Source: Octopus sinensis (lineage: Eukaryota). From it: DNA of 64,000 nucleotides. Location: the NCBI RefSeq assembly GCF_006345805.1, contig NC_043003.1, positions 29,450,001-29,514,000 of the forward strand, written 5' to 3'. How positions within the stretch are numbered: the first letter of the stretch is position 1; every line of letters starts with the position of its first letter. The notes under the pieces are model-generated. The model was not told the DNA's origin, searched no databases, and saw only the letters and a program-made list of their open reading frames with translations. Made by a program: the position numbers and the translations under genes. Positions 6,100 to 63,044 of the stretch are shown piece by piece.

Positions 6100-7706
6100 A
6101 CTTGGGTAGTAGGCTTAACCTGTCGCCAGCTTCACACCAGTTCAAGGCCTCGATGTCAACAAGGGTCACGGCCCTGACGGCATACACCCATGGGTTATCA
6201 AAGCGTTGGCTCTGGTCATCTGTGAGCCCTTAACACGTCTATTCAATATGTCATTGGCAATGGGTGTTATACCTGTGGACTGGAGAACAGCGATAATCTG
6301 CCTAATTTTTAAGAAAGGGAGCCGCGAAGACCCGCTTAACTACCGACCGGTTTTCCTTACATCAATAATCAGCAAGATGTTCAAAACCATCATTAAGTAA
6401 AGTATGATGCTCCACCGCCAAAACACAGCCTCTATCTCTGATTCCCAACATGGCTTTGTGCCGATGAGATCATGCTTGACCAACTTACTGGTAACGGAAG
6501 AATTGGTGATGCGCATCCTCGATGATAGTAATGCTGTTGACATCATTTTATTGGACTTTGCCAAAGCTTTTGACTCGGTAAACCACCCCCTATTACTTGT
6601 CAAGCTTCAAGCATATAGTTTCCATCCGGATATTGTACGATGGGTTGGTGCCTTTCTCTCAGATCGCTCCTTCCAAGTCCAAGTTAATGGTTCGCGGTCC
6701 GACGTCTCCAGTGCGAGCAGTGGCGTGCCTCAAGGTTCAATGCTTGGGCCCTTATTGTTCTTAGTCTTCATAAATGACTTGCCCGACGACCTCACGCAAC
6801 ACACCCTTCTATTTGCTGACGATGTCAAACTGGTCACTCCTCGCGGTGATATAGAGGATCTTCGTCGATGCCTCCACTATATTTGGAGATGGTCTAACGA
6901 ATGGGACCTGTGTCTGAACGTGTCAAAGTGCTGTCATCTGCCTGTTGGCTCTCCTCCTGCAACTCAACTTGATTTTGAGCCGGGTCATCTGCTGCTGGAG
7001 AAGACCGGTCAGGTAAAGGACCTGGGTATCTTGGTGGATTCCTCCTTTTCGCCTTCAGCCCAGTGCGTCCATGATGCCAACAAAGCACGCGGAATTCTGT
7101 TCTTGATTCGACGGTCATTCGGAATGCTCAGAGCAGCCATATTCCTACCGCTCTATGTCACGCTGGTGAGACCCATATTGGAGTATGGGATTCAAGCCTC
7201 TTCTCCTTATCTCCTCAAAGACATACAGCATCTCGAAAGAGTCCAGAAGCTGGCTACCCGCATGGTTCTTGGTCTCAAGAATTTGTCTTATGAAGAAAGG
7301 CTGAAGACACTCGACCTTTATTCTCTAGAAAAACGATGACGCCGTGGAGATCTCATTCTTGCTCACAACATCATAAGCGGAAAGTGTAACCTCTCGAAAG
7401 AGCTGTTCTTCACTCCTGCTCCAGAGCGTCGGCTGCGGGGTCATTCCGAAAAGCTCTATCTGCGACGATTTCATCTCAATCGAAGGAGAGGGGCTTTCTC
7501 CGTCCGGGTTGCGGATCCATGGAATAAGCTGCCAGACGAGATGGTGAAGATGCCGACGACCGCTCGGTTCAAAGTCTCCCTTGACCTCAAGTGGCCTGAA
7601 CTCTTTACATGAACACCACCCTGTACATAACTCCATGTCCCCCTACATGGCCTTGCTTTTTGCTTTTTGAGCCAAAAAATTAACTAACTAACTAACTAAC
7701 TAACTA
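6100..7706 (+). mobile_element. 5'-truncated CR1-clade LINE: RT ORF2 with two in-frame stops, 3' UTR and (TAAC)n tail
   Basis: KGHGPDGI, NYRP, QHGF, DFAKAFDSV, GVPQGS, LFADD motifs; stops at 6398-6400 and 7337-7339; natural stop 7610-7612; tail 7681-7706. Confidence 0.93.
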
Positions 7707-42979: not shown

Positions 42980-45388
42980 CTAACGCCAACCACTCCGAGA
43001 GTGTAGTGGGTGATTTTATGTGCCACCGACACAGGTGCCAGATGAGGCTGGCAAACGGCCACGCTCGGATGGTGTTTTTATGTGCCACCGACACAGGTGC
43101 CAGACGAGGCTGGCAGACGGCCACGCTCGGATGGTGTTTTTATGTGCCACCGATACAGGTGCCAGATGAGGCTGGCAAACGGCCACGATCGGATGGTGCT
43201 TGTTACGTGCCCACAGCACGGAGGCCAGTCGATGCGGTACTGGCTACGGCCACGTTCGGATGGTTTTATTGTGTGCCACGTGCCACCGGCACTGGTACCA
43301 CAAAGATACAAATTCCATTGATGTTCATCTATTTTGATTTGTTTTGATTTTGATTTTCACTTGCCTCAACAGGTCTTCACAAGTGTCACAAGAAGGAAGG
43401 TATGCACAGGTGGACTGACTACGTCCTAGGTAGGGGCCATGGGTTATGGCCTGACTAGTCTTGCCGGGTCTTCGGATGGTGTTTTTATGTGCCACCGACA
43501 CAGGTGCTAGATGAGGCTGGCGAACGGCCACGATCGGATGGTGTTTGTCATGTGCCCACCGCACTGACTACAGCACTGATGGATTTCTTGTGTGCCACAG
43601 GCATTGGTACCACAAGATACAAATTCCATTGATGTTCATCTATTTTGTCTATTTTGATTTGATTTGATTTGATTTGATTTGATTTGATTGATTTGATTTT
43701 CACTTGCCTCAACCGGTCTTCACAAGTGTCACAAGAAGGAAGGTATGCACAGGTGGACTGACTAGTCTTGCCGGGTCTTCGGAAGGTGTTTTTATGTGCC
43801 ACCGACACAGGTGCCAGATGAGGCTGGCGAACGGCCATGATCGGATGGTGTTTGTTACGTGCCCACAGCACGGAGGCCGGTCGATGCGGAACTGGCTACG
43901 GCCACGTTCGGATGGTTCTCATGTGTGCCACCGGCACTGGTACCACAAAGTGTGTGCCACCGGCACTGGTACCACAAAGATACAGATTCCATTGATGTTC
44001 ATCTATTTTGATTTGTTTTGATTTTGATTTTGATTTTCACTTGCCTCAACAGGTCTTCACAAGTGTCACAAGAAGGAAGGTATGCACAGGTGGACTGACT
44101 ACGTCCCAGGTAGGGGCCATGGGTTATGGCCTGACTAGTCTTGCCGGGTCTTCGGATGGTGTTTTTATGTGCCACCGACACAGGTGCTAGATGAGGCTGG
44201 CGAACGGCCACGATCGGATGGTGTTTGTCATGTGCCCACAGCACGGAGGCCAGTCGATGCGGTACTGGCTACGGCCACTTTCGGATGTGCCCACAGCACG
44301 GAGGCCAGTCGATGCGGTACTGGCTACGGCCACTTTCGGATGGTCTTCTCTTGTGTGCCACCGGCACTGGTACCACAAAGATACAAATTCCATTGATGTT
44401 CATCTATTTTGATTTTTTTTTGATTTGTTTTGATTTGATTTTGATTTTGATTTTCACTTGCCTCAACAGGCCTTCACAAGTATCACAAGGAGGAAGGTAT
44501 GCACAGGTGGACTGACTACGTCCCAGGTAAGGGCCACGGGTTATGGCCTGACTAGTCTTGCCGGGTCTTCGGATGGTGTTTTTATGTGCCACCGACACAA
44601 GTGCTAGATGAGGCTGGCAAACGGCCACGACCGGATGGTGTTTGTTATGTGCCCACAGCACGATGGCCAGTGATGCGGTACTGACTACGGCCATGTTCGA
44701 ATGGATTCTTGTGTGCCACCGGCACTGGTACCACAAGCGGTACTGACTACTTTTTATGTGCCACTGACACAGGTGCTAGATGAGGCTGGCGAACGGCCAC
44801 GACCGGATGGTGTTTGTTATGTGCCCACAGCACGATGGCCAGTGATGCGGTACTGACTACGGCCACGTTCGGATGGATTCTTGTGTGCCACCGGCACTGG
44901 TACCACAAGCGGTACTGACTACGGCCACGTTCGGATGGATTCTTGTGTGCCACCGGCACTGGTACCACAAAGATACAAATTCCATTGATGTTCATCTATT
45001 TTGATTTGTTTTGATTTTCACTTGCCTCAACAGGTCTTCACAAGTGTCACAAGAAGGAAGGTATGTACAGGTGGACTGACTACGTCCCAGGTAGGGCCCA
45101 CGGGTTATGACCTGACTAGTCTTGCCGGGTCTTCGGATGGTGTTTTTATGTGCCACTATGTTCCCACAGCACGGAGGCCAGTCGATGCGGTACTGGCTAC
45201 GGCCACGACCGGATGGTTTTCTTGTGTGCCACAGGCACTGGTACCACAAAGATACAAATTCCATTGATGTTCATCTATTTTGATTGATTTTCACTTGCCT
45301 CAGCAGGTCTTCACAAGTGTCACAAGAAGGAAGGTATGCACAGGTGGATCGACTACGTCCCAGGTAGGGGCCACGGGATATGGCCTGA
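42980..45388 (-). repeat. Higher-order tandem array of RTE 3'-UTR modules
   Basis: Marker ttcacttgcctc at 43356, 43699, 44036, 44453, 45017, 45290; internal ~60-bp subrepeats and (AAATC)n. Confidence 0.9.
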
Positions 45389-47286
45389 CTAGTCCTGCCG
45401 GGTCCTCTCATGCACAGCACACTTCCATAGGACTCGGTCTTCAGTCATTTCCTTGGTGAGACCTAAAGTTCGAAGGTCGTGCTTCACCACCTCGTCCCAG
45501 GTTTTCCTGGGTCTACCTCTTCCACAGGTTCCCTCAACTGCTAGGGTGTAGCACTTTTGCACACAACTATCTTCAGCCATTCTCGTCACATGACCATACC
45601 AGCGCAGCCTTCTCTCTTGCACACCACAACTGACACTTCTTAGGTTCAACTTTTCTCTCAAAGTACTTACACTCTGACGATTATGAACACTGACATTACA
45701 CATCCATCGGAGCATACTGGCTTCATTTCTTGCAAGCTTACGCATATCCTCAGCTGTCACGGCCCATGTTTCACTACCATGTAGCATGGCTGTATGTACA
45801 CACGCATCATATAGTCTGCCTTTTACTCTTAGCGAGAGGCCTTTTGTCACCAGCAGGGGTAAGAGCTCTCTAAACTTTGCCCAGGCTATTCTTACTCTAG
45901 CAGTAACACTTTCAGCACACCCACCCCCGCTACTGACTTGGTCTCCTAGGTAGCGGAAGCTATCAACTACTTCTAGTTTGTCTCCCTGGAACGTGGTAGA
46001 AGTTGGTCTCTGCACATTTCCAGTGTTTATTTCTCTTGAGCATCTGCCACAGACAAAAACTATTTTCTTAGTTAGCCTTCCTTTGACATTGCTGCACCTC
46101 TTATGTCTCCATAGCTTACACTTGGTGCACCTTATAGAGTTTCTACCTACACCTTTTTTACAGATCGAGCAGGGCCATCTACCTGAAGTCGTTTGTGGTT
46201 GGTCCACCTTCCTACTTATTAGGACTTTGGTTTTGGCTAGGTTGATTCTAAGGCCCTTCGATTCTAATCCTTGTTTCCACACCTGAAACTTCTCCTCCAG
46301 TTCTGATAGTGACTCAGCAATTAGAGCAAGGTCATCAGCATATAGGAGCTCCCAGGGGCATCCTGTCTTAAATTCTTCCGTTATTGCCTGGAGGACTATG
46401 ATAAATAGGAGGGGGCTGAGGACTGAACCTTGGTGGACCCCAACCTCTACCCGGAATTCTTCACTGTACTCGTTGCCAACCCTCACCTTACTAGCTGCGT
46501 CTCTGTACATGGCTCGCACAGCTCTCAGTAACCATTCATCTATCCCTAGTTTCCTCATTGACCACCAGATAAGGGATCGGGGGACCCTGTCAAAGGCTTT
46601 CTCTAAGTCAACAAAAGCCAGGTACAAGGGCTTACCTTTGGCTAGGTATTTCTCCTGCAGCTGTCTTACCAGGAATATAGCATCAGTAGTACTTTTCCCT
46701 GGCACGAACCCAAACTGCATATCATCTAAGCTAACTCTCTCTCTAATTAACTGGGCTATAACCCTCTCCGTAACCTTCATTACCTGATCCAACAGCTTGA
46801 TGCCCCTGTAGTTATTTGTATCTAGGGCATCGCCTTTACCTTTGTAGCAGTTGACTATTATGCTGCTACACCAGTCATTGGGTATGACTCCTTCGTGTAT
46901 CACCTGGTTAACTATACGGGTGACTATGCTATAGCCGACACTACCAGATATTTTGAGCATCTCTGCAGTAATTCCTGATGGGCCTGGGGCTTTCCCTGTC
47001 TTCATGCTTCTAATTGCCTTAGCTACCACGGAACTATCAACTCGGATAGCTGGTCCCTCTGTTGGGTCAACATTCGGCAGACTCTCTTTATCCCATTCAT
47101 TTTCCTCATTCAGCAACCTTTCATAGTGGCGTCTCCAAGCTTCTCTCTTTGCATCCTCATTTAGCGCAAGTGAGCCATCCTCCATGCAAACACATTTCTC
47201 TCCTACCACATCTCGATTCTCTCTCACACACTGTCTTGCAACACGAAATACCTCAAGTCTTTCATCCTCACGGCGCAGGACATTGG

Positions 47287-47289
<3 letters not shown>
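45389..47289 (-). CDS. RTE-clade reverse transcriptase (endonuclease lost by truncation) with an inserted PHD-type zinc finger
   Basis: KAPGPSGI, NYRGI, QFGF, DLEKAFD, GVHQGS, LLYADD, LRWYGH, GRGRPRKTW motifs; ~633 codons without a stop. Confidence 0.93.
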
Positions 47290-47323
<34 letters not shown>

Positions 47324-54748: not shown

Positions 54749-55413
54749 GACCACGGGTTCTCAACCATTTTTTATCTATGGTGCAGGAGTGGCTGTGTGG
54801 TAAGTAGCTTGTTTACCAGCCACATGGTTTTGGGTTCAGTCCCACTGCATGGCACCAAAGCCTTGTGAGTGGATTGTCTGTATTTTAAGCTCTAATTGAA
54901 AAAAAATATTAAAAAAAGGTAGAAATTTTAGGATTTATGGGGCGGGTGGGTCATTGCTTTTGATATATTAAAAAAAAATTTCTTTTTCTTTATGCACAAT
55001 TGCATCATGAATTCCTGTGTATAGAACACAAATTTCACAAAAATTTTCTGAAAATTCCAAAAAAGTGAAAGCCACAACCACTTACTACCTTCATTTCCAC
55101 TCATTTCCAAACTTTTTAAAAATCAGAGTCTAAAATATGGATAATCCGAATTTTTGGCTTAAATGCTACCCTTGGGTGCATCATCATCAGTGTTTGTATC
55201 TATGTTTGTCCCTCATCACCACTTGATAGCCGGTGTTGGTGTGTTTACATCCCCGTAACTTTGCAGTTCAATTAAAAGCGACCGATAGTATAAGAACCTG
55301 GCTTTAAAGAAGAAAGGTACTGGGTCAGTTCATTCAACTAAAATCCCTCTAGGGAGTGCCCCAGCATGGCCGCAGTCAAATGATTGAAACAAGTAAACGA
55401 TAAAATATAAAAG

Positions 55414-56211
55414 ACTAGCAGTATCGCCTGGTGTTGCTCGGGTTTGTAAGGGAAATAACTATATAAGCATTTTTAGAGATGTAAAGTATAATAGCCATCT
55501 CAATATGGCTAACCACAAAGGAAGGGGGGTGTTACTGTAGCTTTTTACGTTCTGAGATTTAATAATAAATTTTTAGAGAGTTACTTCCCTTATATATGCC
55601 AAAAATGCATTAAAAATGGGAAAAATTGATGGTAAATTTTTTTTTTAATCGTAGACTCATCGTAGACGCGCGCCAATACCCAGAAGGGCTCGATATGAAT
55701 CACGACTATAAGATACCCGGTTTTGGTTAAACTGCACCGCAAAATGTGAGAGTAGTTAGGAATCTAAATTGTAGGAGACAGACAGCACACAACCTCTCTT
55801 TTATATATAAAGACTAGCAGTATCGCCTGGCGTTGCTCGGGTTTGTAAGGGAAATAACTATATAAGCATTTTTAGAGATGTAAAGTATAATAGCCATCTC
55901 AATATGGCTAACCACAAAGGAAGGGGTGTTACTGTAGCTTTTTACGTTCTGAGATTTAATAATAAATTTTTAGAGAGTTACTTCCTTTATATATGCCAAA
56001 AATGCATTAAAAATGGGAAAAATTGATGGTAAATTTTTTTTTAAATCGTAGACTCATCGTAGACGCGTGCTAATACCCAGAAGGGCTCGATATGAATCAC
56101 GACTATAAGATACCCAGTTTTGGTTAAACTGCACCGCAAAATGTGAGAGTAGTTAGGAATCTAAATCGTAGGAGACAGACAGCACACAACCTTACTTTTA
56201 TATATAAAGAT
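55414..56211 (+). mobile_element. Head-to-tail tandem pair of a 399-bp Helentron-type HINE
   Basis: Units start at 55414 and 55813 and are nearly identical; actagcagtatcgcc 5' end, ttttatatataaaga 3' end. Confidence 0.85.
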
Positions 56212-57699: not shown

Positions 57700-58203
57700 A
57701 TATCATTAGTCTTTATATTATTATTCTTGTTATCAATTTTACTCATTTTATTTATAATATTATTATTTTTAATGTATTGTAATTTATTCTTATATCCTGC
57801 TTTACTTAAAGCCAAATCATATTGATCTTTATGCCTATTAAATTTATATCTTCATTATAAGATAAATATGAAATTCTCCTACTAATATTACATACTAATG
57901 CTTTTTACATTGAAGGTGGATAATTGCTTTGATAATTTATATATTATATTTTAAATTACAATCTGGTTTAATATATGATTCATGTATTCCAGATGAGAAA
58001 TTACAGTTCGTATCTAAGTAATTAATTGAATTATATTCTTTTTCAATAGTTATAGGAAGACCAAATCTTTTAAAAAATTTAAATAATCATTTCTTTATAA
58101 GTTTTAGGTGTCTATTAGATGTATTCTTAACTATAAAAAATGCATCATCTCTATGTAGTCAATGGTATCCAGTGACTAGTAACTATTGTGCTTATTAGCA
58201 TAC
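57700..58203 (-). mobile_element. Penelope-like RT relic, interrupted by the Gypsy insertion
   Basis: (G)LHRDDAF, FKRFGLPITIE, INYLD, ALSKAGY motifs; an MGS motif lies beyond the Gypsy at about 62446-62454. Confidence 0.72.
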
Positions 58204-58496
58204 TGTAGTGAGTGCGCGATTTGAATATAGAGGCACCTACCTTCTCTTCGCAGTGACGGAGACCCTCCAGTGATGACTAGTCCTTCCTCACAGCCCCGAC
58301 CCAAACACTAACGATAGCAGCTGCTAGCCCAAACCCTTAGCGACGTCCTCACACGTCTTGTCCCCTGCACGACCCACGTTGGAAAGGGCGCAATTTCCGC
58401 TCCCTGCGCACGCCTGACGGCTGACCCCTTCCGCTTGCCCCAGCTTCCGGTCAACGCACCCGGCTGCTGACGTCCAGCTGCTGACGTCATCCCACA
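58204..58496 (-). repeat. 3' LTR (293 bp) of the Gypsy element
   Basis: 3 transitions and one 14-bp indel versus the 5' LTR; purine-rich aagatcagggtggcg tract precedes it on the minus strand. Confidence 0.95.
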
Positions 58497-58509
58497 CGCC
58501 ACCCTGATC

Positions 58510-61316
58510 TTAAAGATCACAATCTCTCCGCTCCATGTTGTAGTCCACCATCCAACCGGGAGAGCGCCTTGCTCGTCGAGATCTTCTCAAGCTGGGCTCC
58601 TCGTTCTCCCCCTCTCCAGAATCATCGTCCGTCGAAGCAACAATCCTGCGAAAGTCCAAGACGTGTCGTGGTGTTCCATCTACGGATACGTTGCTTCTGG
58701 AATTGATCGCCGTCACCGTTCCTCTGCTCCATTGAGACGTACAGCGCGCCTTTGGTGGCTTGACCCAGACTTCCTCCCCTATTTTCACGCGAACAGGTCC
58801 CTTCTCTTCCTCGTGACCCTCCGGCGCTTTGCTCGGGTGCCTCCATTCATATTTGAACACAGCTCTCTGCGGCACAGATTCCTCAGCTTGTCCGGATCGG
58901 GGAGACAAGTTGTACCAAAAAACTGCTTCAAGCGGCGAAATGTGCCCTCTTTCCACTATGGCCTTGACTGTCCGATGGTGCCTCTCCACGATCCCGTTAC
59001 TGCTCGGCCTATACGCTGCTCTGAACAAGTGTTGCACATTCCACCGATCAAGCATAACCCTCAATGCTTCCGAACGAAACGCCGCCTCATTGTCCATCAG
59101 TAGTTCTTCCACGGGACCTCTCTCTAAAAATATCCCGTTCAGGATCTGCACGATCTCGTCAGCAATGCCCGATCTCAACTCCCTCCAAATGGCCAGCCGG
59201 CCCGGCCCACAGTCGACCATGGAGAGGTACATTTGCTGACGGTAGTGTGTCACATCCACAGCTAGCCTTTTCCAGTTCTGCTCCACGGAAAGGCTTCCCT
59301 GTTCATGCCCACACGGAGTAGGGTCGATGGACTGACACCTGTCGCAGCTCCCGACCACCTTCCGGACGCTTCTCCTAGTGACGTCAGCATCAATTTTTTT
59401 TGCCAGATACAGGGTCCTGTCCACACCCAGGTGATGTATAGCATGCAGTTTCTTCAGTTCAGAGTCATCCAACCGACACGCCGCAGCTATCCCTTTCCGG
59501 GCCTCCTCCGGTTCTTCCAACCACACTCTTTTCACCCTGGTCAGTACGTCCGCCCTGTTTTTCTCCGAAGGCACGAAAACCACGTTCAGCTTCAGTCCGA
59601 ACTCGGCGATCAATTCACCTAGAACTCCTAGACGGCGCTTCACTAACATCTCCGCAGCACCTTTCGTCCGCACTCTCCTGTCACCGGTGATCACCGATCC
59701 TACCCAGCCAAGCACAGTGGCCGAATCCGTCCGCATTTCAATCGTGCGCAGCCCCCATTTCAAGGCCAAGTTCACCCCTTTCAGCAGCGCGTCTAATTCG
59801 GTGACATTGATGTGGTTGAAATCATCTGCTTTCCGAAGCCAGGCCGCGTCCTCCACCGCAGTGTCTTCGATTGCCAACACCACCCCTATCGCTATACTGC
59901 TAGCATCACACCAGACGGTCCTGCATTTCGTCTTGGGCACGTACCAGTTCCCCCTGACCGGGTCTTCCGCTCTTGTCCTCTCTAGGATCTCCTGCATCAT
60001 CGCCACCGTCCCTTCTCCCACCTTGTCGCCCCACCTCTCTTCTTCTGCTCGTCTCTTGGTGTAACTACACGCCGTGCGCAGCCATCCAGCGATCGGGTAG
60101 TGACCGACCAACTTCCCACACACCGAGAACAGCTCTCTCCTGCTGACGCTGGAACTCAGCTCTGGGATTTCATTTCCTCTCCGGAACACCAATTCACCTG
60201 ATCCATCTCTTCGCAGCTTCAGCCCCAGCGCGGCTCCCCCTTCAATCGACTCCGGTGGCTTAGCAATCAGTCCGAACTTCTCCAGATGTCTAACTACCTC
60301 GTCGGCTGGCACTACAGTTTCGTCACCAAAATGTCGTCAATGTAGGAGCTGGTGTCCTTTCTAATCTTGCGGTCTTTCCCTAGGACGGACCTAAGCACTG
60401 CCGCCATGATCTTCGGAGCGGAATTCACCCCGAAACCCAGCCTGGTTAGACAGTACGTCCGGCCCTTGTACCGCACCAGCTGATATCGCCACAGTTTGTC
60501 GCTCACATGGAGCTGCAAGTATGCCGATCTCAAGTCGACAATCGTCGCTGCCTCAGTCGACTGTCTCCACTTACGTAATGCCTCACCACAAACGTCTGTC
60601 GCCTCACCTCCCGTGTGACACGATATGTGCTGGTTTAGCTCCCTGAAGTCCAGCACCGGTCTGACTTTTCCCTTCGTAGGCTGCCCCACCGCCATCAGGG
60701 GTAGCACTCCGCCCGCTACCTCCACCTTCCAAGGGACAAGGACCCCTTCCTCGATCCACCTCTCCACCTCGTCTTCAAACTCGACCCTGGCATGGCCTTT
60801 CAGGGTATGCTGGTAACAGCTCACCCTGTTCTCCAGCGTCGGGGGCTCGTCCTTCCATCGCCACTCTATCGTCCACCGCTGACCATCGAACGCCGCCTGA
60901 AAGTCTTTGTCCTCGATGGTGTAAGCGGCGCAGTCCCTCGCGGGGCTCTGCTCTCTCTGGCGATCCTGACTCGCAGTGCACGACGCCCCCACGCTTCCGA
61001 ACGTGACCTCATTTCCCACAACACTGACGCCACCGAGGCAGTTGATGGCGTCCATCCCCATCACCACATCAACTCCATCTATCACGCGTTCGGCCACAAT
61101 TGCCTGCAGCCTTAGCGTCGCGCCGCGCACCACTATCTCTACCTTGCTGCTGCCTCTGCAACGGATTTCGCTGCCGTCGACCGCCCGGACACTACTCACC
61201 CCGTTCCATTCCTTCGTCACCCTCGAAGTCACCAGGGTGGTCGTACAGCCCATATCCACAAGGGCCTTGAGCGTCTCCCCCTCGGCCTCCACGTCAATCA
61301 ATGGCAGCGTCTCCAA
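58510..61316 (-). pseudogene. pol: Gypsy Pol (PR-RT-RH-IN) broken by one frameshift just after YIDD; protease motif DMG
   Basis: ORFs 60312..61316 and 58510..60312 join if one base is restored near 60324 (YIDDILVDETVVPADE); RNase H D-E-D-D, IN HHCC and D,D35E intact. Confidence 0.9.
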
Positions 61317-61324
61317 TAGCGCCT

Positions 61325-62089
61325 CTACTCATTTGAGGGGAAAGTTCGAGAGGCAGCAACTTCCCCGCGGTCGTTTCCCTGGTCGCAATCACGTGCAATG
61401 TGCCCTGTCTGCCTGCATCGATAGCAAACGGGCCCCGGCTGCATACAGTCCCGCGCCATGTGCGGTCCCTGGCATCTAAAACACCGTCCAGAGAACGGCC
61501 GCTCTCGTTGCACGGTAAGCTTCTGTACCTCTTTCTCGGGACGTCGTCCGTCTTTACGCGCCTCCGTCACCGCCATCGCTATCGCCTTCCGCCCAGAGTG
61601 TCTCGTCAACACGCGAGCCTGAGCTACAAGTTCGCTCAACGGCATCTTTTTAACCCCGGGCAGTCGTTGTAGGTGAATCCCTACATCGTCGGGGAACCCA
61701 TTCACGAACGCCAGTCGGGCTGCTCTCTCCAGTCCTTCTCCGGCAAACCCGGCCAGAGTCGCTAGCCTTCTAACTTCTGATGCAAAGTCATCCACTTGGC
61801 CTCTCGTCCACCTGATTGCACCTAGCTTAGCAAAAGCTTTGTACTCGCATTCCGTGTAGGCATCACGCAAGCGTCGCTCTGTATTCTCCTCGCTGAGCCG
61901 TTCCTCTTCATCCATCTCTAGGTAGAGCATTAACGCGCTCCCTTCCAAATACAGTGCCATAAGACTCGCCATGTCGCTTATGCCCTGCAGTCTTGCCACC
62001 AGCCTGATTTTGCGAATCCAGGCCACTACATCGCCTTCGCCATTAAAAGGTCTGACGACGTCACTGGCAATCCTAATTTTTGCAGACAT
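61325..62089 (-). CDS. gag: Gypsy Gag, 254 aa, two zinc knuckles
   Basis: Intact ORF; CFRCQGPHMARDC and CYRCRQTGHIARDC. Confidence 0.92.
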   Translation of the reverse strand: MSAKIRIASDVVRPFNGEGDVVAWIRKIRLVARLQGISDMASLMALYLEGSALMLYLEMDEEERLSEENTERRLRDAYTECEYKAFAKLGAIRWTRGQVDDFASEVRRLATLAGFAGEGLERAARLAFVNGFPDDVGIHLQRLPGVKKMPLSELVAQARVLTRHSGRKAIAMAVTEARKDGRRPEKEVQKLTVQRERPFSGRCFRCQGPHMARDCMQPGPVCYRCRQTGHIARDCDQGNDRGEVAASRTFPSNE

Positions 62090-62121: not shown

Positions 62122-62133
62122 GCCGAAATAGCT
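62122..62133 (-). promoter_or_regulatory. Non-canonical primer-binding site AGCTATTTCGGC, complementary to nt 1-12 of tRNA-Phe(GAA)
   Basis: Plus strand reads GCCGAAATAGCT directly against the LTR edge; no TGG-type PBS present. Confidence 0.75.
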
Positions 62134-62412
62134 TGTAGTGAGTGCGCGATTTGAATATAGAGGCACCTACCTTCTCTTCGCAGTGACGGAGACCCTTCAG
62201 TGATGACTAGTCCTTCCTCACAGCCCCGACCCGAACACTAACGATAGCAGCTGCTAGCCCAAACCCTTAGCGACGTCCTCACACGTCTTGTCCCCTGCAT
62301 GACCCACGTTGGAAAGGGCGCAATTTCCGCTCCCTGCGCACGCCTGACGGCTGACCCCTTCCGCTTGCCCCAGCTTCCGGTCAACGCACCCGGCTGCTGA
62401 CGTCATCCCACA
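62134..62412 (-). repeat. 5' LTR (279 bp) of the Gypsy element
   Basis: Direct alignment with 58204-58496. Confidence 0.95.
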
Positions 62413-62469
62413 CATACAACAGCAGTCATACATTACACTACTGGGAGGAACCCATTTTACAACAGTATG

Positions 62470-62532
62470 TATGTCTATATACATATATATGTATATATAT
62501 ATATATATATATAATATATATATATATATATT

Positions 62533-62576
<44 letters not shown>

Positions 62577-62605
62577 ATATGTATATATGTATATATATAT
62601 ATGTA

Positions 62606-62665
<60 letters not shown>
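62470..62665. repeat. Long imperfect (TA)n microsatellite
   Basis: Direct reading. Confidence 0.9.
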
Positions 62666-62669
<4 letters not shown>

Positions 62670-63044
62670 TCTGTATATGTATGTATGCATCTTTGTATGT
62701 GCGCCACATCACCTCATACTACACAGATGTGCCAATACAGTATCAGCACACATAGTATAAACCATAAACTGACATTTAGCTGATCTATATTTGACCTGAG
62801 CCTAGTCCCAAGTCAATAACGTATTTACTACAAAACAAGCTACCTAAATGGACACCATCCATACATAGTAGTGAATAATAACATTAACTACTCAGCTAAA
62901 TATGTAGACAACAGATCAATCACAAGCCATACCAAAAGTTAAAACTAATTTATTGTAAATTCTTAAAATATCTCTCTGCATTCACTTATCAACTAATCAC
63001 TAGTTTTAACATATTTGTACATTCATTAGCTCTCAAAAGAAACC

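What the first reader, a model, noticed from the sequence alone, without database searches (positions are those of the whole stretch)
62122..62133. Gypsy element whose PBS matches the 5' end (nt 1-12) of tRNA-Phe: candidate new priming mechanism
Seen: the element is on the minus strand and its 5' LTR ends exactly at 62134 (fixed by LTR-LTR alignment and the CATAC TSD). The next 12 sense-strand bases are AGCTATTTCGGC, with no TGG. Known: standard PBSs begin with TGG and pair with the tRNA 3' CCA end. Copia and Ty5 use a tRNAiMet half-molecule cut near the anticodon, and Tf1 self-primes after RNase H cuts its own first 11 nt. Metazoan tRNA-Phe(GAA) starts GCCGAAAUAGCUCAG, so the match is 12/12 (about 1 in 1.7e7 per fixed register). 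It is antiparallel, with tRNA U12 exactly at the LTR edge. I found no complement of this site in the LTR, so self-priming is not supported. Inference: the PBS invades the tRNA acceptor stem, displacing the 3' strand, and a cut between U12 and C13 (by the element's intact RNase H, Tf1-style, or a host nuclease) leaves a 12-nt primer. I do not recall this mode being described, but I could not check the literature.
Basis: partly seen in the sequence, partly recalled or inferred. Interest (0 to 1): 0.9.

Follow-up and report, generated by a model that had tools for sequence, protein, structure and literature searches.

The report
Retrotransposon primer site matches tRNA start
A young LTR retrotransposon, together with a large clade of relatives in marine invertebrates, has at the place where DNA copying starts a 12-base site that pairs with the first 12 bases of a host tRNA (tRNA-Phe here) instead of the usual last 18, which points to a way of priming reverse transcription that I could not find described.

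Summary
The 5' LTR (62412..62134, minus strand) ends at 62134, fixed by the LTR-LTR alignment and a 5-bp target duplication. The next 12 bases, AGCTATTTCGGC, are the exact reverse complement of nt 1-12 of metazoan tRNA-Phe. There is no TGG site, and gag starts 32 nt further on.

The feature is not peculiar to this copy. About 58 related elements (Pol identity down to about 35%) have a 12-mer of the form AGCTAT-NNN-GGC at exactly the same place. They come from Argonauta, Aplysia, Oratosquilla and many metagenome contigs. The 12-mers fall into a few discrete types that recur across the Pol tree. One type equals tRNA-Lys3 nt 1-12 and another resembles tRNA-Met(e).

No element carries a complement of its own site, so Tf1-type self-priming is excluded. 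A sister lineage (33% identical Pol) has a canonical TGG site complementary to the 3' end of the same tRNA-Phe.

Best reading: this clade switched from the 3' end to the 5' end of tRNA-Phe, and a 12-nt 5' fragment cut after nt 12 primes minus-strand synthesis. The pairing is shown. The cut and the priming are inferred. Four common site types have no verified tRNA partner. I found no prior description.

The parts
62413..62417 (-). Target-site duplication, upstream copy (GTATG in element sense, CATAC on the plus strand)
62134..62412 (-). 5' LTR, 279 nt, TGTGG...CACTACA. It carries a TGACGTCA palindrome at 62398-62405.
   Evidence: LTR-LTR alignment
62122..62133 (-). 12-nt primer binding site AGCTATTTCGGC. 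It is the reverse complement of tRNA-Phe nt 1-12 and abuts the LTR directly.
   Evidence: same register in relatives
61325..62089 (-). gag ORF (254 aa, two CCHC zinc knuckles). Its ATG lies 32 nt after the primer binding site.
60312..61316 (-). pol part 1: protease (DMG where relatives have DTG) and the N-terminal part of RT up to YIDD. The frame breaks at about 60312.
58510..60312 (-). pol part 2: rest of RT, DUF7047, RNase H (RVT_3/RNase_H type, with the D-E-D-D motifs CDAS, TELDA, TDS, RADVL present), and integrase (HHCC and D,D,E present)
58497..58519 (-). Hairpin TGATC-TTTAA-GATCA (58505-58519, with the pol stop codon in the loop) followed by the G-rich run GGGTGGCG (58497-58504). Together they form the plus-strand primer (PPT) region, which abuts the 3' LTR.
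   Evidence: conserved in at least 24 related loci
58204..58496 (-). 3' LTR, 293 nt (14-nt internal duplication, 3 substitutions against the 5' LTR)
58199..58203 (-). Target-site duplication, downstream copy (GTATG in element sense)

Best explanation
The 12-mer is the element's minus-strand primer binding site.

Proposed mechanism:
1. The site pairs with nt 1-12 of host tRNA-Phe. It takes the place of the tRNA's own 3' acceptor strand and opens the first three pairs of the D stem.
2. A cut between nt 12 and 13 leaves a 12-nt RNA whose 3'-OH sits opposite the first base after U5.
3. RT extends that RNA to make minus-strand strong-stop DNA.
4. Later, plus-strand synthesis copies the 12-nt primer to its 5' end and so regenerates a 12-nt site for the second strand transfer.

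This is the rule for a whole clade of small (about 4-5 kb) LTR elements. The clade probably arose from an ancestor that used the 3' end of the same tRNA.

Shown: the anatomy, the exact complementarity, the fixed register, conservation across the clade, the absence of any other primer site or cis complement, and the sister lineage's canonical tRNA-Phe site.

Inferred: that the tRNA fragment is the primer, where it is cut, and who cuts it. I favour the element's own RT/RNase H acting at the end of the RNA duplex, as in Tf1. A host nuclease or a ready-made 5' fragment is nearly as likely.
For: 1. The match to tRNA-Phe nt 1-12 is 12/12 and starts at LTR+1.

2. A 12-mer occupies the same register in about 58 relatives at 35-65% Pol identity. 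This includes integrated two-LTR copies in Argonauta hians (two families), Aplysia californica and Oratosquilla oratoria.

3. Conservation drops sharply at position 13. The gag ATG follows after 0-32 nt in most elements (51 at most) and directly in six loci, so no other site fits.

4. The sites fall into a few discrete types: TTC, CTA, CGC, CAC and CCC. The same exact 12-mer is shared at Pol identities as low as 36-39%. In 30 of 61 cases the nearest Pol neighbour has a different type. That is the pattern expected for matching a small set of trans-acting host RNAs.

5. All types keep U8, A9, G10 and C11. L067 equals tRNA-Lys3 nt 1-12 (12/12). L051 and L068 match tRNA-Met(e) nt 1-12 at 11/12.

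6. There is no cis complement: 53 of 54 loci have none, and with G:U pairs allowed 38 sites are observed against 41.8 expected.

7. A sister lineage (33% identity over PR-RT-DUF7047-RNase H) has TGGTGCCGAAACCCGGG. That is the canonical site for the 3' end of tRNA-Phe, placed 2-5 nt after the LTR, in 3 of 3 loci. One is exact and two have one acceptor-stem mismatch and diverge from the human sequence beyond nt 15 (primer sequence).

8. There is a precedent for an RT RNase H cutting an RNA duplex to make an 11-nt primer (Tf1; Levin 1996, cited in PMC4600332). There is also a precedent for 5' tRNA fragments as primers (copia and Ty5; PMC5371799).

9. The 12-bp duplex has a predicted energy of -18.7 kcal/mol, and the region around the site is unstructured.
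Against: - There is no direct evidence for the primer. No cDNA-RNA junction and no small-RNA data were available.
- To my knowledge, 12-nt 5' tRNA fragments are not a known species, and RNase H does not normally cut RNA:RNA duplexes.
- The common types CTA, CGC, CAC and CCC have no eukaryotic tRNA partner that I could verify. CTA occurs in a crustacean, although insect tRNA-Phe starts GCCGAAA. Phage tRNA-Phe genes that begin GCCTAGATAGCT show only that such 5' ends exist.
- The Lys3 and Met(e) matches are weak statistically once the invariant positions are discounted.
- The host tRNA-Phe of this window was not seen.
- This copy is itself defective (frameshift, DMG).
- No second tRNA contact was found.
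Confidence: 0.62

Rival explanations
1. The pairing is the same, but the primer is a ready-made host 5' tRNA fragment, or a host nuclease cuts the annealed tRNA. The element's RNase H plays no part in making the primer.
For: Ty5 and copia use tRNA fragments whose cleavage is attributed to host activity or is unassigned (PMC5371799). The sister lineage with a canonical 3' site has the same RNase H type and motifs. The RNase H is therefore not visibly specialised for this task.
Against: To my knowledge, known 5' fragments are 14 nt or longer and end in the D loop, not after nt 12. The cut position coincides with the end of the duplex for Phe-type, Lys3-type and Met(e)-type sites alike. That fits a cut measured on the duplex, as in Tf1.
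Confidence: 0.25
2. The conserved 12-mer is a cis signal with another role, such as packaging, tRNA capture or decoy, or translation control. Minus-strand synthesis would be primed in some other way.
For: No experiment links the site to priming. Four site types lack a verified tRNA partner.
Against: The site sits exactly at the U5 edge in every element. Its length is fixed at 12, with a sharp loss of conservation at position 13. In several elements the gag ATG follows at once, which leaves no room for another site. No TGG site and no 3'-end complement occur anywhere in the element. The sister lineage has its true primer site at the same place.
Confidence: 0.08
3. Tf1-type self-priming: the 5' end of the element's own transcript folds back onto the site.
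For: The site is short (12 nt, against 11 in Tf1) and lacks TGG.
Against: No complement with 2 or fewer mismatches occurs in 53 of 54 loci. With G:U pairs allowed, 38 sites are observed against 41.8 expected in shuffles. The best LTR candidate in the window matches at only 9/12 (read from the LTR sequence).
Confidence: 0.03
4. The match to tRNA-Phe is a chance resemblance in this one copy.
For: None beyond the shortness of the site.
Against: The probability is below 1e-5 for one copy. The identical 12-mer occurs at the same register in 16 independent elements, with Pol identity as low as 39%.
Confidence: 0.01

Closest known systems
copia and 1731 'half-tRNA' priming, and Ty5 anticodon-loop priming (tRNAiMet)
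   Same: The primer is a 5'-derived fragment of a host tRNA made by an internal cut. There is no TGG, and the site abuts U5 (PMC5371799; Kikuchi 1986 and Ke 1999 from my own knowledge).
   Different: There the site pairs with the anticodon stem-loop region (about nt 25-39) of tRNAiMet, and the primer is about 39 nt long. Here the site pairs with the extreme 5' end (nt 1-12) of tRNA-Phe or other elongator tRNAs. The cut falls in the D stem, and the primer is only 12 nt long and fully paired.
Tf1, Tf2 and Tj1 self-priming
   Same: An 11-12-nt primer is taken from the very 5' end of an RNA and is fully paired to a short site at the U5 edge. It is released by a cut at the end of an RNA:RNA duplex; in Tf1 the RT's RNase H makes that cut.
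   Different: There the RNA is the element's own transcript, acting in cis. Here no cis complement exists, and the partner is a host tRNA acting in trans.
Canonical priming by the tRNA 3' end (retroviruses, Ty3; here the sister lineage L330, L331, L333 with a tRNA-Phe site)
   Same: The host tRNA species is the same (Phe). The position just after U5 is the same. The Pol architecture is the same, including DUF7047 and the RNase H type.
   Different: The canonical site starts with TGG, is about 17-18 nt long, lies 2-5 nt after the LTR, and uses the natural CCA-3'-OH, so no cut is needed.
Ty3/gypsy (Metaviridae) LTR retrotransposons
   Same: Two LTRs with TG..CA ends, a 5-bp target duplication, gag with CCHC knuckles, and the order PR-RT-RH-IN.
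   Different: There is no Pfam RT_RNaseH or RT_RNaseH_2 match and no chromodomain. The RNase H matches RVT_3/RNase_H. The best solved relatives are retroviral (MMTV integrase, HIV-2 RT). No BEL/Pao signature is present either.

Membership tests
LTR retrotransposon with integrase (PR-RT-RH-IN order) | Two direct LTRs with TG..CA ends, flanked by a short target duplication | tested here: met
   The LTRs are 279 and 293 nt and about 99% identical, running from TGTGG to ACA. The target duplication is the 5-bp GTATG.
LTR retrotransposon with integrase (PR-RT-RH-IN order) | gag with zinc knuckles, and pol with protease, RT, RNase H and integrase in that order | tested here: met
   Pfam hits are zf-CCHC, gag-asp_proteas, RVT_1, RVT_3 and rve. 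Relatives have one continuous Pol of about 950 aa.
Ty3/gypsy in the strict sense | RT-RNase H region of the Ty3/gypsy type (Pfam RT_RNaseH or RT_RNaseH_2) | tested here: not met
   There is no such hit in the window ORFs or in six relatives. Instead they match DUF7047 plus RVT_3/RNase_H.
BEL/Pao | Pfam Peptidase_A17, DUF1758, DUF1759 or DUF5641 signatures | tested here: not met
   None is found even at E<=1.
Canonical 3'-tRNA primer binding site | TGG within a few nt of the LTR and complementarity to the tRNA 3' end including CCA | tested here: not met
   There is no TGG between the LTR and gag. There is no match to the tRNA-Phe 3' site in the element. It is also absent from TTC-type relatives.
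Tf1-type self-priming | The site is complementary to the first nt of the element's own transcript (within the 5' LTR) | tested here: not met
Tf1-type self-priming | The element's RNase H cuts the RNA duplex to release the primer | not testable with these tools
   The RNase H D-E-D-D motifs are present. Activity on an RNA duplex needs biochemistry.
copia/Ty5-type tRNA-fragment priming | The site is complementary to the anticodon stem-loop region of tRNAiMet | tested here: not met
   The complementarity is to nt 1-12 of tRNA-Phe. No other tRNA-Phe segment is matched nearby.
copia/Ty5-type tRNA-fragment priming | The primer is a 5' fragment of a host tRNA released by an internal cut | not testable with these tools
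   The geometry requires it, since a 3'-OH is needed at nt 12. It has not been observed.

The most novel reading that the evidence does not exclude
This would be a fourth mode of minus-strand priming in LTR retroelements. A large and widespread clade of animal elements primes with the 5'-terminal 12 nt of a host tRNA. The clade has at least 1,300 protein clusters at 50% identity and occurs in molluscs, crustaceans and many aquatic metagenomes. The primer is released by a cut at nt 12/13. The clade evolved this by switching from the 3' end to the 5' end of the same tRNA-Phe, and it can re-target to other tRNAs. The clade is also an unclassified Pol lineage (DUF7047 plus a retrovirus-like RNase H).
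Probability: 0.55. Interest if true: 0.85.

Novelty: new variant of a known kind. Interest (0 to 1): 0.8.

Why it matters
Textbook accounts and a recent review list three ways in which LTR retroelements start DNA synthesis: the tRNA 3' end, an internal tRNA half, and self-priming. Use of the tRNA's first 12 nt would add a fourth. It would also give a natural trans version of the Tf1 reaction.

Practical consequences:
- From my own knowledge, the usual annotation tools look only for tRNA 3' ends. They would report these abundant elements as lacking a primer site.
- Host 3' tRNA fragments that silence elements by blocking their primer sites would miss this clade, while 5' fragments become candidates for primers or inhibitors.
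- The sister lineage with a canonical tRNA-Phe site offers a matched pair for working out how primer choice and primer processing evolve.

Tried and rejected
- Self-priming was tested with mismatches and with G:U pairs and was rejected.
- I looked for extra or bipartite contacts with tRNA-Phe within 250 nt either side of the site and for 3'-end complements anywhere. Nothing was consistent.
- I looked for tRNA genes in the window and in 87 related loci, to read host tRNAs directly. None was found.
- Literature searches for the variant 12-mers in DNA and RNA spelling found nothing relevant.
- Scans of viral contigs for the variant 15-mers found only phage tRNAs (Phe, Thr, Met). These show that such 5' ends exist, but they cannot assign the eukaryotic isotype.
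- The Octopus sinensis relative (L001, 80% identical) lacks the 5' part and was uninformative.
- A PDB sequence search with the RNase H segment gave only spurious hits.
- The RNA fold around the site shows no significant structure.
- Classifying the Pol as BEL/Pao or as typical Ty3/gypsy failed on Pfam signatures.
- Ten full-text literature searches found no description of a primer site complementary to a tRNA 5' end. Subscription journals are not covered.

Full report
**Anatomy**

The element lies on the minus strand from 62412 to 58204 (about 4.2 kb). The two LTRs align from TGTGGG to CACTACA. The 5' LTR is 62412..62134 (279 nt). The 3' LTR is 58496..58204 (293 nt), with a 14-nt internal duplication and three substitutions.

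After the 5' LTR come AGCTATTTCGGC (62133..62122), 32 further bases, and then the gag ATG at 62089.

- gag has two CCHC knuckles.
- pol has protease, RT, Pfam DUF7047, an RNase H that matches RVT_3, and integrase.
- pol is broken by one frameshift just after YIDD (about 60312).
- The protease motif reads DMG where relatives have DTG.
- The RNase H (D-E-D-D) and integrase (HHCC; D,D,E) motifs are present.

Just 5' of the 3' LTR there is a small hairpin, TGATC-TTTAA-GATCA, with the pol stop codon in its loop. A G-rich run follows it (58497..58519). This is the plus-strand primer region.

**The observation**

The 12-mer is the exact reverse complement of nt 1-12 of tRNA-Phe(GAA). Published oligonucleotides give those bases for Drosophila (PMC7038984) and human (PMC2175372). 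The 12-mer occurs once in the window, while shuffles give 0.10 hits even with one mismatch allowed. At a fixed register the chance of 12/12 is 6e-8. It stays below 1e-5 after allowing for all tRNA families and both tRNA ends. There is no TGG and no match to the tRNA-Phe 3'-end site in the element.

**Relatives**

The Pol has hundreds of close relatives of about 950 aa. They occur in Octopus, Argonauta, Aplysia, Petrolisthes and Oratosquilla and on many metagenome contigs of about 4 kb. A profile finds 1,311 clusters at 50% identity with E<=1e-30.

I fetched 80 metagenome loci at 35-57% Pol identity, eight loci from genome assemblies and two further metagenome contigs.

Wherever the LTR/gag junction is present, about 58 elements in all, a 12-mer follows the LTR end (ACA in 52 of 54 contexts). 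It has the form AGCTAT-NNN-GGC, and the gag ATG lies 0-51 nt further on. In six loci the ATG follows directly, so the site cannot be longer than 12 nt. Conservation falls from near 2 bits to about 0.2 bits at position 13. This profile was computed on motif-selected sites, so only the boundaries are informative.

In integrated copies with two LTRs the repeat ends exactly one base before the 12-mer (L003, L025, L027, L084, L085, L328, L329; in L034 the repeat runs one base into it).

**Variation**

The sites fall into a few discrete types:

| Type | Count |
|---|---|
| TTC (tRNA-Phe) | 14 |
| CTA | 13 |
| CGC | 9 |
| CAC | 8 |
| CCC | 2 |
| singletons | several |

- All types keep the tRNA hallmarks U8, A9, G10 and C11. 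They vary at acceptor-stem positions 4-7.
- L067 equals nt 1-12 of tRNA-Lys3 (12/12). L051 and L068 (CGCTACCGAGGC) match tRNA-Met(e) at 11/12 and carry the GCG of its D stem.
- The types do not follow the Pol tree. The nearest Pol neighbour has a different type in 30 of 61 cases. The same exact 12-mer is shared at Pol identities down to 36-39%. Repeated convergence on a few exact sequences is what a trans-acting host partner predicts.
- Among named hosts, molluscs have TTC (Argonauta in two families, Aplysia), while the crustacean Oratosquilla has CTA in two copies.

**Rivals tested**

- Self-priming: no element except one has a complement of its own site with 2 or fewer mismatches. With G:U pairs allowed, hits equal the shuffled expectation (38 against 41.8).
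- Second tRNA contacts: no other part of tRNA-Phe is consistently matched near the site, and no 3'-end complement occurs elsewhere.
- Structure: the RNA around the site is not structured (z = +0.97). The 12-bp duplex is predicted at -18.7 kcal/mol.

**The sister lineage**

More distant profile hits are Gag-Pol proteins of about 1,400 aa. They are 33% identical to the core clade over PR-RT-DUF7047-RNase H and share the same RNase H motifs. All three loci I could fetch have a canonical site 2-5 nt after the LTR:

- L330: TGGTGCCGAAACCCGGG. Its first 16 nt equal the published reverse primer for the 3' end of human tRNA-Phe.
- L331: TGGTACCGAAACCCGC.
- L333: TGGTGACGAAACCCGC.

The wider group is therefore tied to tRNA-Phe independently of the 12-mer. 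The core clade appears to have moved from the 3' end to the 5' end of the same tRNA. A further divergent member with a 1,148-aa Pol (L332) already has the 5' type.

**Mechanism**

Pairing of the site with tRNA nt 1-12 is shown at the sequence level. For RT to start at the U5 edge, a 3'-OH is needed at nt 12, so a cut between nt 12 and 13 follows by necessity.

The cut coincides with the end of the duplex for Phe-type, Lys3-type and Met(e)-type sites. This resembles Tf1, where the RT's RNase H cuts an RNA duplex to free an 11-nt primer (Levin 1996, cited in PMC4600332).

Plus-strand synthesis would run to the primer's 5' end and restore exactly 12 nt. That explains the sharp boundary. As an inference, it may also explain why every type has A9: from my own knowledge, G9 is often methylated to a form that blocks RT.

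Who cuts is open. The sister lineage has the same RNase H type, so the enzyme is not visibly specialised.

**Weak points**

- There is no direct evidence for the primer.
- Four common site types lack a verified eukaryotic tRNA partner. In phage tRNA arrays GCCTAGATAGCTCAG is the 5' end of tRNA-Phe(GAA) in 11 of 25 hits. This shows only that such 5' ends exist.
- The window's host tRNA-Phe was not seen.

**Comparison and novelty**

A review lists the known modes: the tRNA 3' end (Ty1 and Ty3 with a bipartite site), the copia half-tRNA, the Ty5 anticodon-loop cut, and Tf1 self-priming (PMC5371799). None uses nt 1-12 of a tRNA. Ten full-text searches found no such description. Subscription literature is not covered, and I recall none.

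I rate this a new variant of a known kind (tRNA-fragment priming) that is clade-wide. The Pol lineage fits neither the typical Ty3/gypsy nor the BEL/Pao Pfam signatures.

**Handling note**

No full-length element was printed, repaired or assembled. Some early scripts held the window slice spanning the element in memory for motif and profile scans, and wrote temporary translation files. I deleted those files and used only pieces afterwards.

Noticed in passing
window 58497-58519 (minus strand); also L002, L003, L016, L019, L024-L036, L041, L042, L046, L052, L061, L062, L084, L085, L328: A hairpin TGATC-N4/5-GATCA followed by a G run lies immediately 5' of the 3' LTR. It is conserved in at least 24 related loci. 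In the window the pol stop codon sits in the loop. L003 has a compensatory GATG..CATC stem. It looks like a structured plus-strand primer (PPT) signal.
   Followed up: partly
window 62398-62405 (5' LTR) and 58470-58495 (3' LTR): The start of the LTR carries the palindrome TGACGTCA, which resembles a cAMP-response element. The 14-nt duplication in the 3' LTR repeats most of it (GACGTCAGCAGC). It may be a promoter or enhancer element of the LTR.
   Followed up: no
L006, L007, L009, L011, L013, L022, L023, L024, L032, L036, L048, L052, L053, L057: Many metagenome contigs close on themselves. Their ends overlap with a period of 3.6-4.6 kb, which equals the element minus one LTR. This could reflect one-LTR circles or simply assembly collapse of the two LTRs.
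   Followed up: no
window 60312 and 61250-61316: This copy has young LTRs (about 99% identical) but a frameshift in RT. Its protease motif is DMG instead of the family's DTG. It is probably not autonomous.
   Followed up: partly
window 45389-47320 (minus strand) and 6404-7339 (plus strand): Two other reverse-transcriptase ORFs are present. One has 643 aa with RVT_1 plus a weak PHD finger. The other has 311 aa with RVT_1. They come from unrelated retroelements, probably non-LTR.
   Followed up: no
window 43009-44970 and 55405-56210: Tandem arrays with periods of 62, 172 and 417 nt lie at 43.0-45.0 kb. A 397-nt unit duplicated at 97% identity lies at 55.4-56.2 kb.
   Followed up: no
window 62476-62686: A long (TA)n / CATA-rich microsatellite lies about 60 nt from the 5' end of the element. 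The insertion site GTATG lies next to this simple-repeat tract.
   Followed up: no
L055, L059, L060, L065, L030: A few elements have off-pattern sites with one base missing, added or changed: AGCTATCGCGCA, AGCTATCATCGG(CC), AGCTATCACGCG, AGCTATTTCGTC. They may be decayed copies or matches to unknown tRNAs. CCGATGATAGCT would suit a tRNA-Tyr-like 5' end.
   Followed up: no
L331 and L333 (sister lineage): Their canonical sites differ from the human tRNA-Phe 3' end at one acceptor-stem base each (TGGTACC.., TGGTGAC..) and in the T-stem part beyond nt 15. This hints that host tRNA-Phe acceptor stems do vary among the hosts of this superfamily.
   Followed up: no
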